A stretch of DNA of 63,065 nucleotides, counting the filler, from Octopus bimaculoides (taxonomy: Eukaryota), in assembly GCF_001194135.2 (NCBI RefSeq). It is 5 parts of 5 records of this genome, joined end to end, with 100 filler letters (N's around TTAATTAATTAA, not from the genome) between each part and the next. Parts side by side here need not be neighbours in the genome. Positions count along the whole stretch, not along the records: positions 1 to 22,243 come from NC_068986.1; 4 more parts are not named here. One strand, written 5' to 3'. The position numbers and the translations under genes were made by a program. Every line of letters begins with the position of its first letter. Position 1 is the first letter of the stretch. The notes under the pieces were generated by a model. The model saw only the letters and a list, made by a program, of their open reading frames with translations, ran no database searches and was not told where the DNA came from. This document shows positions 14,207-14,350 of this stretch, piece after piece.

Positions 14207-14264
14207 TTTTTTTTTATTATAGTTTCAGCATAGAGCTGCGGCCATGCTGATGCACCGCCTTGAG
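14207..14264 (-). mobile_element. LINE-type 3' tail with A-rich end, fused to U6
   Basis: minus strand aaggcggtgcatcagcatggccgcagctctatgctgaaactataataaaaaaaaa; homologous to the LINE end at 46857-46894 and to family A tails. Confidence 0.8.
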
Positions 14265-14350
14265 AAAAATATGGAACGCTTCACGAATTTGCGTGTCATC
14301 CTTGCGCATGCGCCATGCTAATCTTCTCTGTACCGCCGAAGTTCAGAAAC
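14265..14350 (-). pseudogene. U6: U6 snRNA retropseudogene
   Basis: 14265-14332 minus reads TACAGAGAAGATTAGCATGGCGCATGCGCAAGGATGACACGCAAATTCGTGAAGCGTTCCATATTTTT, 66/68 identical to canonical U6 as I recall it (ACAGAGA box, AGC triad, 3' oligo-U); upstream CTTCGGC resembles the U6 5' stem-loop. Confidence 0.95.

What the first reader, a model, noticed from the sequence alone, without database searches (positions are those of the whole stretch)
14207..14350. U6 snRNA fused at its 3' oligo(U) to a CR1-group LINE tail: U6-LINE chimera or U6-headed SINE
Seen on minus: U6 sequence ending ...CCATATTTTT, then CTC, then AAGGCGGTGCATCAGCATGGCCGCAGCTCTATGCTGAAAC and an A-rich end. This tail is homologous to the end of the CR1/L2-group LINE at 46857-46894 and to family A SINE tails; its second hairpin (CAGC-5 nt-GCTG) matches the LINE geometry (CAGC-5 nt-GTTG) better than the SINE one (CAGTC-4 nt-GACTG). 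Known: U6/L1 chimeras joined at the U6 oligo(U) exist in mammals, attributed to template switching or RtcB ligation, and U1/U2-derived SINEs exist in crocodilians. Inference: a stringent-type, non-L1 LINE in a mollusc has captured U6 in the same way, keeping only the recognition tail; if multicopy with the same junction it would be a U6-derived SINE. I know no description of this in cephalopods. No TSD is visible.
Basis: partly seen in the sequence, partly recalled or inferred. Interest (0 to 1): 0.8.

Follow-up and report, generated by a model that had tools for sequence, protein, structure and literature searches.

The report
Truncated U6 fused to retroposon tail
A 5'-truncated copy of the U6 spliceosomal RNA is joined at its natural oligo(U) end to the short two-hairpin 3' tail shared by the abundant octopod SINE. 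This is most likely a dead chimeric retrocopy of a kind already described for L2/RTE-type LINEs in platypus and lizard, here seen in an octopod.

Summary
Rfam finds U6 on the minus strand (71.4 bits, E 1.6e-16). It ends ...CCATATTTTT at 14265 and is followed by CTC, a 40-nt tail (14222-14261) and an A-rich end.

Only U6 nt 37-107 are present (14265-14335, 68/71 identical to canonical U6). The 5' 36 nt are missing, so this is neither a gene nor a full-length "head".

The tail folds into two hairpins and is homologous to the tails of seven SINE copies in the window. It differs from them more than its age allows (7-8 differences against about 1.7 expected), including a compensatory change. Its source is therefore another lineage: the partner LINE or another SINE subfamily. 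I could not tell which.

No target-site duplication is present.

The best reading is a chimeric retrocopy made by template switching or RNA ligation. Doucet et al. 2015 describe the same anatomy for U6-L2/Mon-1 in platypus and for U6-L2, U6-RTE and U6-AnolisSINE2 in Anolis. The mechanism class is therefore known, and only the taxon is new.

The U6-headed SINE reading could not be tested, because no octopod genome was reachable with these tools. It is disfavoured by the 5' truncation and by the external promoter of animal U6 genes.

The parts
14265..14335 (-). U6 snRNA segment corresponding to nt 37-107 of canonical U6 (CGGTACAGAGAAG...CCATATTTTT). It ends in the natural T5.
   Evidence: Rfam U6 hit. 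Local alignment to canonical U6 gives 68/71 identical with a sharp boundary at nt 37. Two of the three substitutions fall in the GGCCCCTGCGC region, which reads GGCGCATGCGC here.
14336..14367 (-). Sequence included in the Rfam hit but not recognisably U6. It is most likely the 5' flank of the insertion.
   Evidence: No alignment to U6 nt 1-36 apart from a 7-mer, CTTCGGC. Non-canonical pairs and low posterior in the cmscan alignment.
14262..14264 (-). CTC between the U6 oligo(U) and the tail. It is either junction filler or the first bases of the tail donor.
   Evidence: Sequence. The SINE copies have ...GCTCGACTAAAGG at the equivalent place, so CTC may belong to the donor.
14222..14261 (-). 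40-nt retroposon 3' tail AAGGCGGTGCATCAGCATGGCCGCAGCTCTATGCTGAAAC with two hairpins (HP1 14240-14259, HP2 14226-14238).
   Evidence: Pattern search. RNA fold gives -17.6 kcal/mol, z -3.3. Alignment with SINE tails. Pair counts show 92.6% of cells paired and 3 pairs with double changes.
14207..14221 (-). A-rich terminus TATAATAAAAAAAAA of the chimera.
   Evidence: Sequence. It differs from the (TAAAAGAR)n ends of most SINE copies.
14121..14206 (.). Imperfect (TA)n/(TG)n microsatellite separating the chimera's tail from the tail of an oppositely oriented SINE copy. It hides any 3' target-site duplication.
   Evidence: Tandem Repeats Finder rows 14130-14207. Sequence.
13916..14120 (+). Neighbouring SINE 3' half (tail core 14077-14102, A9 at 14113-14121). 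It lies tail-to-tail with the chimera and is context, not part of it.

Best explanation
This is a dead-on-arrival chimeric retrocopy. A mature U6 snRNA, ending in its natural UUUUU, became joined to the last ~43-55 nt of an RNA that carries the two-hairpin 3' recognition tail of the octopod LINE/SINE system.

The join could have arisen in two ways. The LINE reverse transcriptase may have started target-primed reverse transcription on the tail and then switched template to the 3' end of U6. Alternatively, an RNA ligase may have joined the two RNAs before reverse transcription. Reverse transcription then stopped at U6 nt 37, giving the 5' truncation, and the cDNA was integrated.

Shown here: the anatomy, the exact junction at the U6 3' end, the conserved tail structure, and the sharp 5' boundary.

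Inferred: the RNA-level origin, the enzyme, and the conclusion that this copy is inert. It lacks the 5' stem-loop and carries changes in the internal stem-loop region. No tRNA-like B box is present in the 465 nt upstream. A U6-type upstream promoter was not looked for.
For: - The junction lies exactly at the mature U6 3' end (T5), in the same orientation as the tail.
- The tail is a bona fide member of the tail family: 8 matches against 0 expected. It keeps both hairpins. The C-G at the fourth pair of hairpin 2 replaces the U-A of the main SINE, and the family shows 3 pairs with double changes (11/500 shuffles reach this; slid controls give 20-41% paired against 92.6%).
- All seven other tails in the window sit on SINE bodies where sequence is available, so a solitary 40-nt tail is exceptional.
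- U6 is 96% identical over 71 nt and then loses similarity abruptly, as a 5' truncation would, not gradual decay.
- The tail differs from the main SINE tail at 7-8 of about 41 positions, whereas the U6 divergence predicts about 1.7 (Poisson P 0.002). The donor was therefore a distinct lineage.
- The same anatomy is documented for stringent LINEs: 5'-truncated U6 plus short L2 or SINE sequence, with TSD of 1-9 bp or none (Doucet 2015, PMC4476161).
- RtcB-mediated U6 ligation is documented for L1 (PMC6789731, abstract).
Against: - There is no target-site duplication, so integration as one unit is not proven. The 3' flank is a microsatellite and a second SINE, which could hide or destroy one.
- The partner LINE with this tail was not seen in the piece.
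- Only one copy is available, from a gap-rich short-read assembly.
- The CTC filler is unexplained.
Confidence: 0.68

Rival explanations
1. This is a 5'-truncated copy of a multicopy U6-headed SINE family. A master element made of U6 plus the LINE tail amplified with a constant junction.
For: The architecture (small-RNA head plus LINE-type tail) is that of SINEs, and U1/U2-headed SINEs with CR1-type partners exist (PMC4494074). Meeting such an element in a random 22-kb piece would be more likely if there were many copies. Nothing I ran excludes it, because no octopod genome was searchable.
Against: No second copy exists in the window or in 40 kb of O. bimaculoides and Argonauta DNA. This copy lacks U6 nt 1-36. 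Animal U6 genes use upstream promoter elements with no internal promoter (established knowledge, restated in PMC4494074), so copies would not be self-transcribing. No tRNA-like head or B box lies upstream. Literature searches found no U6-derived SINE.
Confidence: 0.1
2. This is a coincidental juxtaposition. A strongly 5'-truncated SINE or LINE copy inserted by chance right after a pre-existing U6 pseudogene, or the reverse.
For: SINE tails are very dense here, at 8 per 22 kb. T-rich and A-rich sites attract LINE endonucleases. No TSD brackets the whole unit.
Against: The tail would have to start within 3 nt of the U6 3' end and in the same orientation. That is roughly 1e-4 per U6 copy at the observed tail density (my estimate). 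No other solitary tail exists in the window. A 5'-truncated, tail-less U6 pseudogene would itself need a retrotransposition mechanism, and such pseudogenes are rare where only stringent LINEs act.
Confidence: 0.1
3. This is an assembly artefact that joins a U6 copy to a repeat tail in a short-read scaffold.
For: The window has many N gaps next to repeats. A 59-nt exact duplicate sits at a gap edge 350 nt away.
Against: The interval 13857-14700 is gap-free. The tail variant shares only about 14 nt of exact sequence with the common SINE tail. That is too short to mislead a de Bruijn assembler (inference; the assembler's k-mer size is not known to me). A mis-join inside the 71-nt U6 segment would still leave some U6 copy joined to this tail.
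Confidence: 0.05

Closest known systems
U6-L2 and U6-Mon-1 chimeric retrocopies of platypus, and U6-L2, U6-RTE and U6-AnolisSINE2 chimeras of Anolis (Doucet et al. 2015, PMC4476161)
   Same: U6 is joined through its 3' end to a short 3' segment of a stringent-type LINE or its SINE. The U6 part is almost always 5'-truncated. The TSD is tiny or absent. There is no poly(A)-only form.
   Different: The host is a mollusc (octopod), not a vertebrate. The donor tail is a different, two-hairpin sequence whose LINE clade was not determined here. Only one copy has been seen, so recurrence is unknown.
U6/L1 chimeric pseudogenes of placental mammals (template switching, or RtcB ligation: Moldovan et al. 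2019, PMC6789731)
   Same: The junction is at the U6 oligo(U), the parts share orientation, and the LINE 3' end is retained.
   Different: In L1 chimeras U6 is usually full length, the L1 part varies and is often long, there is a poly(A) tail, and 7-20 bp TSDs are present. Here U6 is truncated, the tail is minimal (just the hairpins), and there is no TSD.
SINEU (U1/U2-headed SINEs of crocodilians, Kojima 2015, PMC4494074)
   Same: An snRNA-derived 5' part plus a LINE-derived 3' tail.
   Different: SINEU families are multicopy with uniform junctions, and their heads come from pol II snRNAs. No multicopy evidence exists here, and the head is a truncated U6.
Functional U6 snRNA gene
   Same: 71 nt at 96% identity, including ACAGAGA and the 3' oligo(U).
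   Different: It lacks nt 1-36 (the 5' stem-loop) and has two substitutions in the conserved GGCCCCUGCGC segment. It is followed directly by a retroposon tail.

Membership tests
U6/LINE (or SINE) chimeric retrocopy | U6 sequence with an intact 3' oligo(U) joined directly, in the same orientation, to the 3' part of a LINE or SINE | tested here: met
   T5 at 14265-14269, then CTC, then the tail at 14222-14261.
U6/LINE (or SINE) chimeric retrocopy | The retroposon part runs to the element's own 3' terminus | tested here: met
   The tail aligns to SINE tails through GAAAC and is followed by an A-rich end.
U6/LINE (or SINE) chimeric retrocopy | A target-site duplication flanks the whole chimera | tested here: not met
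   The longest shared word is 5 nt, and 97% of shuffles reach this. This is expected to be weak for L2-type partners (1-9 bp in 72.5% of platypus cases). Here it is also obscured by the microsatellite and the neighbouring SINE.
U6/LINE (or SINE) chimeric retrocopy | A donor LINE or SINE with the same tail exists in the same genome | tested here: inconclusive
   The tail family is present (7 SINE copies). The exact variant (CAGC-TCTAT-GCTG) was not found on any other element. No LINE 3' end is present in the piece.
U6-headed SINE (SINEU-like) | Many copies with one and the same head/tail junction | not testable with these tools
   No octopod genome was searchable. The control tail pattern found only 2 bacterial chance hits in metagenomes and 0 in viral contigs. 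The protein collections hold almost no octopod ORFs. There was no second copy in the window or in L003 and L005.
U6-headed SINE (SINEU-like) | A head that carries its own promoter and a defined 5' end | tested here: not met
   The copy starts at U6 nt 37. There is no tRNA gene and no B box within 465 nt upstream. Metazoan U6 promoters are external (PMC4494074).
Functional U6 snRNA gene | Full-length RNA with the 5' stem-loop and a conserved internal stem-loop | tested here: not met
   Nt 1-36 are absent, and GGCGCATGCGC replaces GGCCCCTGCGC. All 31 U6-derived ORFs whose sequences were read, out of about 600 matches, keep the canonical version (RLAWPLRKDD).
The 8-nt (TAAAAGAR)n ends of the SINE copies resemble CR1-type ends, but that is only a resemblance. 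The LINE consensuses with complete ORFs reported for O. bimaculoides are RTE and Dong (PMC9115989).

The most novel reading that the evidence does not exclude
The element is one of many copies with the same junction in octopod genomes. That would make it a retroposon family built on a U6 fragment plus a minimal two-hairpin LINE tail. It would be the first SINE-like family with a U6-derived module, and it would have to be transcribed from something other than an internal U6 promoter.
Probability: 0.08. Interest if true: 0.65.

Novelty: new member of a known kind. Interest (0 to 1): 0.3.

Why it matters
It extends a known by-product of LINE activity from vertebrates to a mollusc: U6 captured by stringent, tail-recognising LINEs. 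This supports the view that template switching or ligation to U6 is a general property of non-LTR retrotransposition.

The chimera retains only about 43 nt of tail, just the two hairpins. This gives a natural estimate of the minimal recognition module of the very successful octopod LINE/SINE system. If the element proved recurrent, U6 chimeras could serve as markers of LINE activity through octopod evolution, as they do in mammals.

As a single inert copy it has no evident consequence for the host.

Tried and rejected
1. Metagenome scan for the junction pattern returned 0 hits. The control scan with the common tail pattern gave only two bacterial chance matches and 0 in viral contigs. These collections hold no octopod DNA, so the negative result is uninformative.
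2. I searched translations of four junction-spanning reading frames against the 5.8-billion protein collection. I also searched the 41-aa junction ORF against 1.84 billion representatives. About 600 U6-derived spurious ORFs from other organisms turned up, and none of the 31 whose sequences were read carried the tail. This is also weak, because a SINE-derived ORF found only 4 relatives.
3. Exact look-ups found nothing on record for the 30-aa junction ORF or for two neighbouring window ORFs. These were meant to find independent assemblies of the locus.
4. I sampled octopod DNA through transposase homologues. This gave 20 kb of O. bimaculoides with one SINE tail and no U6, and 20 kb of Argonauta hians with half a SINE. 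Two ENA contigs proved not to be octopod.
5. Sequence-string searches of papers and of the O. vulgaris transcriptome supplement found no U6 and no variant tail in the stored part.
6. I considered an internal deletion of U6 that keeps CTTCGGC of the 5' loop. I rejected it as unsupported: it rests on a single 7-mer, with about 3% chance expectation by my estimate, and the local alignment stops at nt 37.
7. I looked for a composite SINE with a tRNA head upstream and rejected it.
8. Low-threshold Rfam hits (mir-466, mir-297 and others) are microsatellite artefacts.

Full report
**Observation.** On the minus strand the window reads ...CGGTACAGAGAAGATTAGCATGGCGCATGCGCAAGGATGACACGCAAATTCGTGAAGCGTTCCATATTTTT-CTC-AAGGCGGTGCATCAGCATGGCCGCAGCTCTATGCTGAAAC-TATAATAAAAAAAAA-(TA/CA)n. 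Rfam reports U6 (RF00026) at 14265-14367 at 71.4 bits (gathering score 44, E 1.6e-16). It is the only family above threshold in the piece. A permissive Rfam scan adds only microsatellite artefacts and no second U6 fragment.

**Extent of the U6 part.** A local alignment to canonical U6 covers nt 37-107 only, which is window 14265-14335, with 68/71 identical. Upstream of that point nothing aligns. I wrote the canonical sequence from memory and cross-checked it against the reading frame of the U6-derived ORFs. In its 5' part the Rfam alignment contains non-canonical pairs and low posteriors. The U6 part is therefore sharply 5'-truncated and lacks the 5' stem-loop. Two of its three substitutions fall in the conserved GGCCCCUGCGC segment. 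All 31 U6-derived ORFs whose sequences I read keep the canonical version. It is a pseudogene fragment, not a gene.

**The tail.**
- The 26-nt tail core occurs 8 times in the window, against 0 expected.
- Seven occurrences are 3' ends of one abundant SINE with an internal (TA)n(TG)n microsatellite. The same SINE occurs in O. bimaculoides (L003), and its 5' half occurs in Argonauta hians (L005). The host is therefore an octopod.
- All tails fold into the same two hairpins.
- On an alignment of eight distinct tails, 92.6% of cells pair, against 20-41% for slid controls. Three pairs show changes on both sides, a count reached by only 11 of 500 shuffles.
- The U6-linked tail keeps both hairpins. 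At the fourth pair of hairpin 2 it has C-G where the main SINE has U-A, a state it shares with the SINE copy at 12247-12272. In hairpin 1 it has C-G where the main SINE has U-G.
- It is 79-83% identical to the SINE tails.
- If the tail had been copied from the main SINE and aged like the U6 part (3/71), about 1.7 differences would be expected. Seven to eight are seen (P about 0.002).
- The donor was therefore another lineage carrying the same kind of tail. It could be the partner LINE or another SINE subfamily.

**Flanks.** No target-site duplication exists. The longest shared word is 5 nt, and 97% of shuffles reach this. The 3' flank is an imperfect microsatellite followed by the tail of an oppositely oriented SINE 3' half, so the two retroposons lie tail-to-tail. 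No tRNA-like head and no B box lie in the 465 nt upstream.

**Mechanism.** Four features together are best explained by one RNA-level event:
- The junction lies exactly at the mature U6 3' end.
- The two parts share orientation.
- The tail is solitary and minimal but structurally complete.
- The U6 5' boundary is abrupt.

The tail-recognising LINE machinery would have started reverse transcription on a tail-bearing RNA and switched to U6. Alternatively it copied a pre-ligated U6-tail RNA, then stopped at nt 37 and integrated the product.

This anatomy is already documented. Doucet et al. 2015 (PMC4476161) report 40 platypus chimeras of U6 with L2 or Mon-1. Almost all have a 5'-truncated U6 upstream of a short L2 sequence, and TSDs of only 1-9 bp occur in 72.5% of them. 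They also report chimeras with L2, RTE and AnolisSINE2 in Anolis. They further list candidate cases, which they could not confirm, with RTE in opossum and with CR1 in turkey. RtcB ligation of U6 to other RNAs is documented for L1 (PMC6789731).

**Rivals.**
- *U6-headed SINE family.* This cannot be excluded, because no octopod genome was reachable. The metagenome and viral collections hold none. The protein collections hold almost no octopod ORFs. Exact look-ups failed. Several points argue against it. This copy lacks the U6 5' end. Animal U6 has no internal promoter (PMC4494074). No second copy occurs in about 62 kb of octopod DNA. No U6-derived SINE turned up in the literature searches.
- *Chance juxtaposition.* This needs a solitary truncated tail, otherwise unseen here, to land within 3 nt of the U6 end in the right orientation.
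- *Assembly artefact.* This is unlikely, because the interval is gap-free and the tail variant shares only about 14 nt of exact sequence with the common SINE tail. However, the scaffold is gap-rich and carries a suspicious 59-nt exact duplicate at a gap edge nearby.

**Verdict.** It is a U6/retroposon-tail chimera of the type known for stringent LINEs in vertebrates. It is new only for its host group, since no cephalopod report was found. Copy number, the donor element and the LINE clade remain open. A genome-wide search for the junction would settle the first two, and a reverse-transcriptase tree of the donor would settle the third.

Noticed in passing
window 13857-13915 and 14112-14170: A 59-nt exact direct repeat (TAAAAAAAAATATGTGTGTGTTTGTG...) brackets the + strand SINE 3' half. 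Over 78 nt the identity is 93.6%. The first copy begins at the very edge of the N gap at 13556-13856. It is either a gap-edge assembly duplicate or a microsatellite-mediated tandem duplication of the unit 'SINE 3' half + A9 + microsatellite'.
   Followed up: partly
window 14077-14261: Two retroposon tails face each other: the SINE on + and the U6 chimera on -. Each ends in a 9-nt A run, and about 85 nt of (TA/TG)n lies between them. This suggests repeated insertion into, or microsatellite growth from, the same A/T-rich site.
   Followed up: no
window ~16150-16950 (+), and 21340-21567 (+): A decayed Tc1/mariner-type transposase with stops and a frameshift. Its relatives carry Pfam PF13358 (DDE_3) and include O. 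bimaculoides LOC128250757 at 64% identity. A separate ORF at 21340-21567 looks like the N-terminal part of a transposase, by eye only and untested.
   Followed up: partly
window 4082, 7109, 9032, 10530, 12247, 14077, 18203 (tail cores): Seven copies of one octopod SINE lie in 22 kb, each with an internal (TA)n(TG)n microsatellite. Most N gaps of the scaffold abut these repeats. The tails show compensatory changes: G-C to U-A in the copy at 4082, and U-A to C-G in the copy at 12247. This indicates several master lineages under selection for the hairpins.
   Followed up: partly
proteins P0001-P0120 and P0177-P0269 (not in the window): Public protein collections contain hundreds of 'proteins' that are simply translations of U6 snRNA genes or pseudogenes (motif QRRLAWPLRKDDTQIREAFHIF). 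About 600 cluster representatives match at E<=1e-3. They are spurious gene calls.
   Followed up: no
L004 and L006 (ENA ERZ21867824, contigs ctg118202l and ctg122284l): Long contigs of an unidentified organism encode transposases 66-78% identical to the window's mariner-like remnant. They carry no octopod SINE.
   Followed up: no
window 18055-18161, 15609-15714, 20936-21073 and others: Low-threshold Rfam matches to mir-466, mir-297 and mir-3149 all lie on TG/TA microsatellites and fall far below the gathering scores. They are artefacts.
   Followed up: yes
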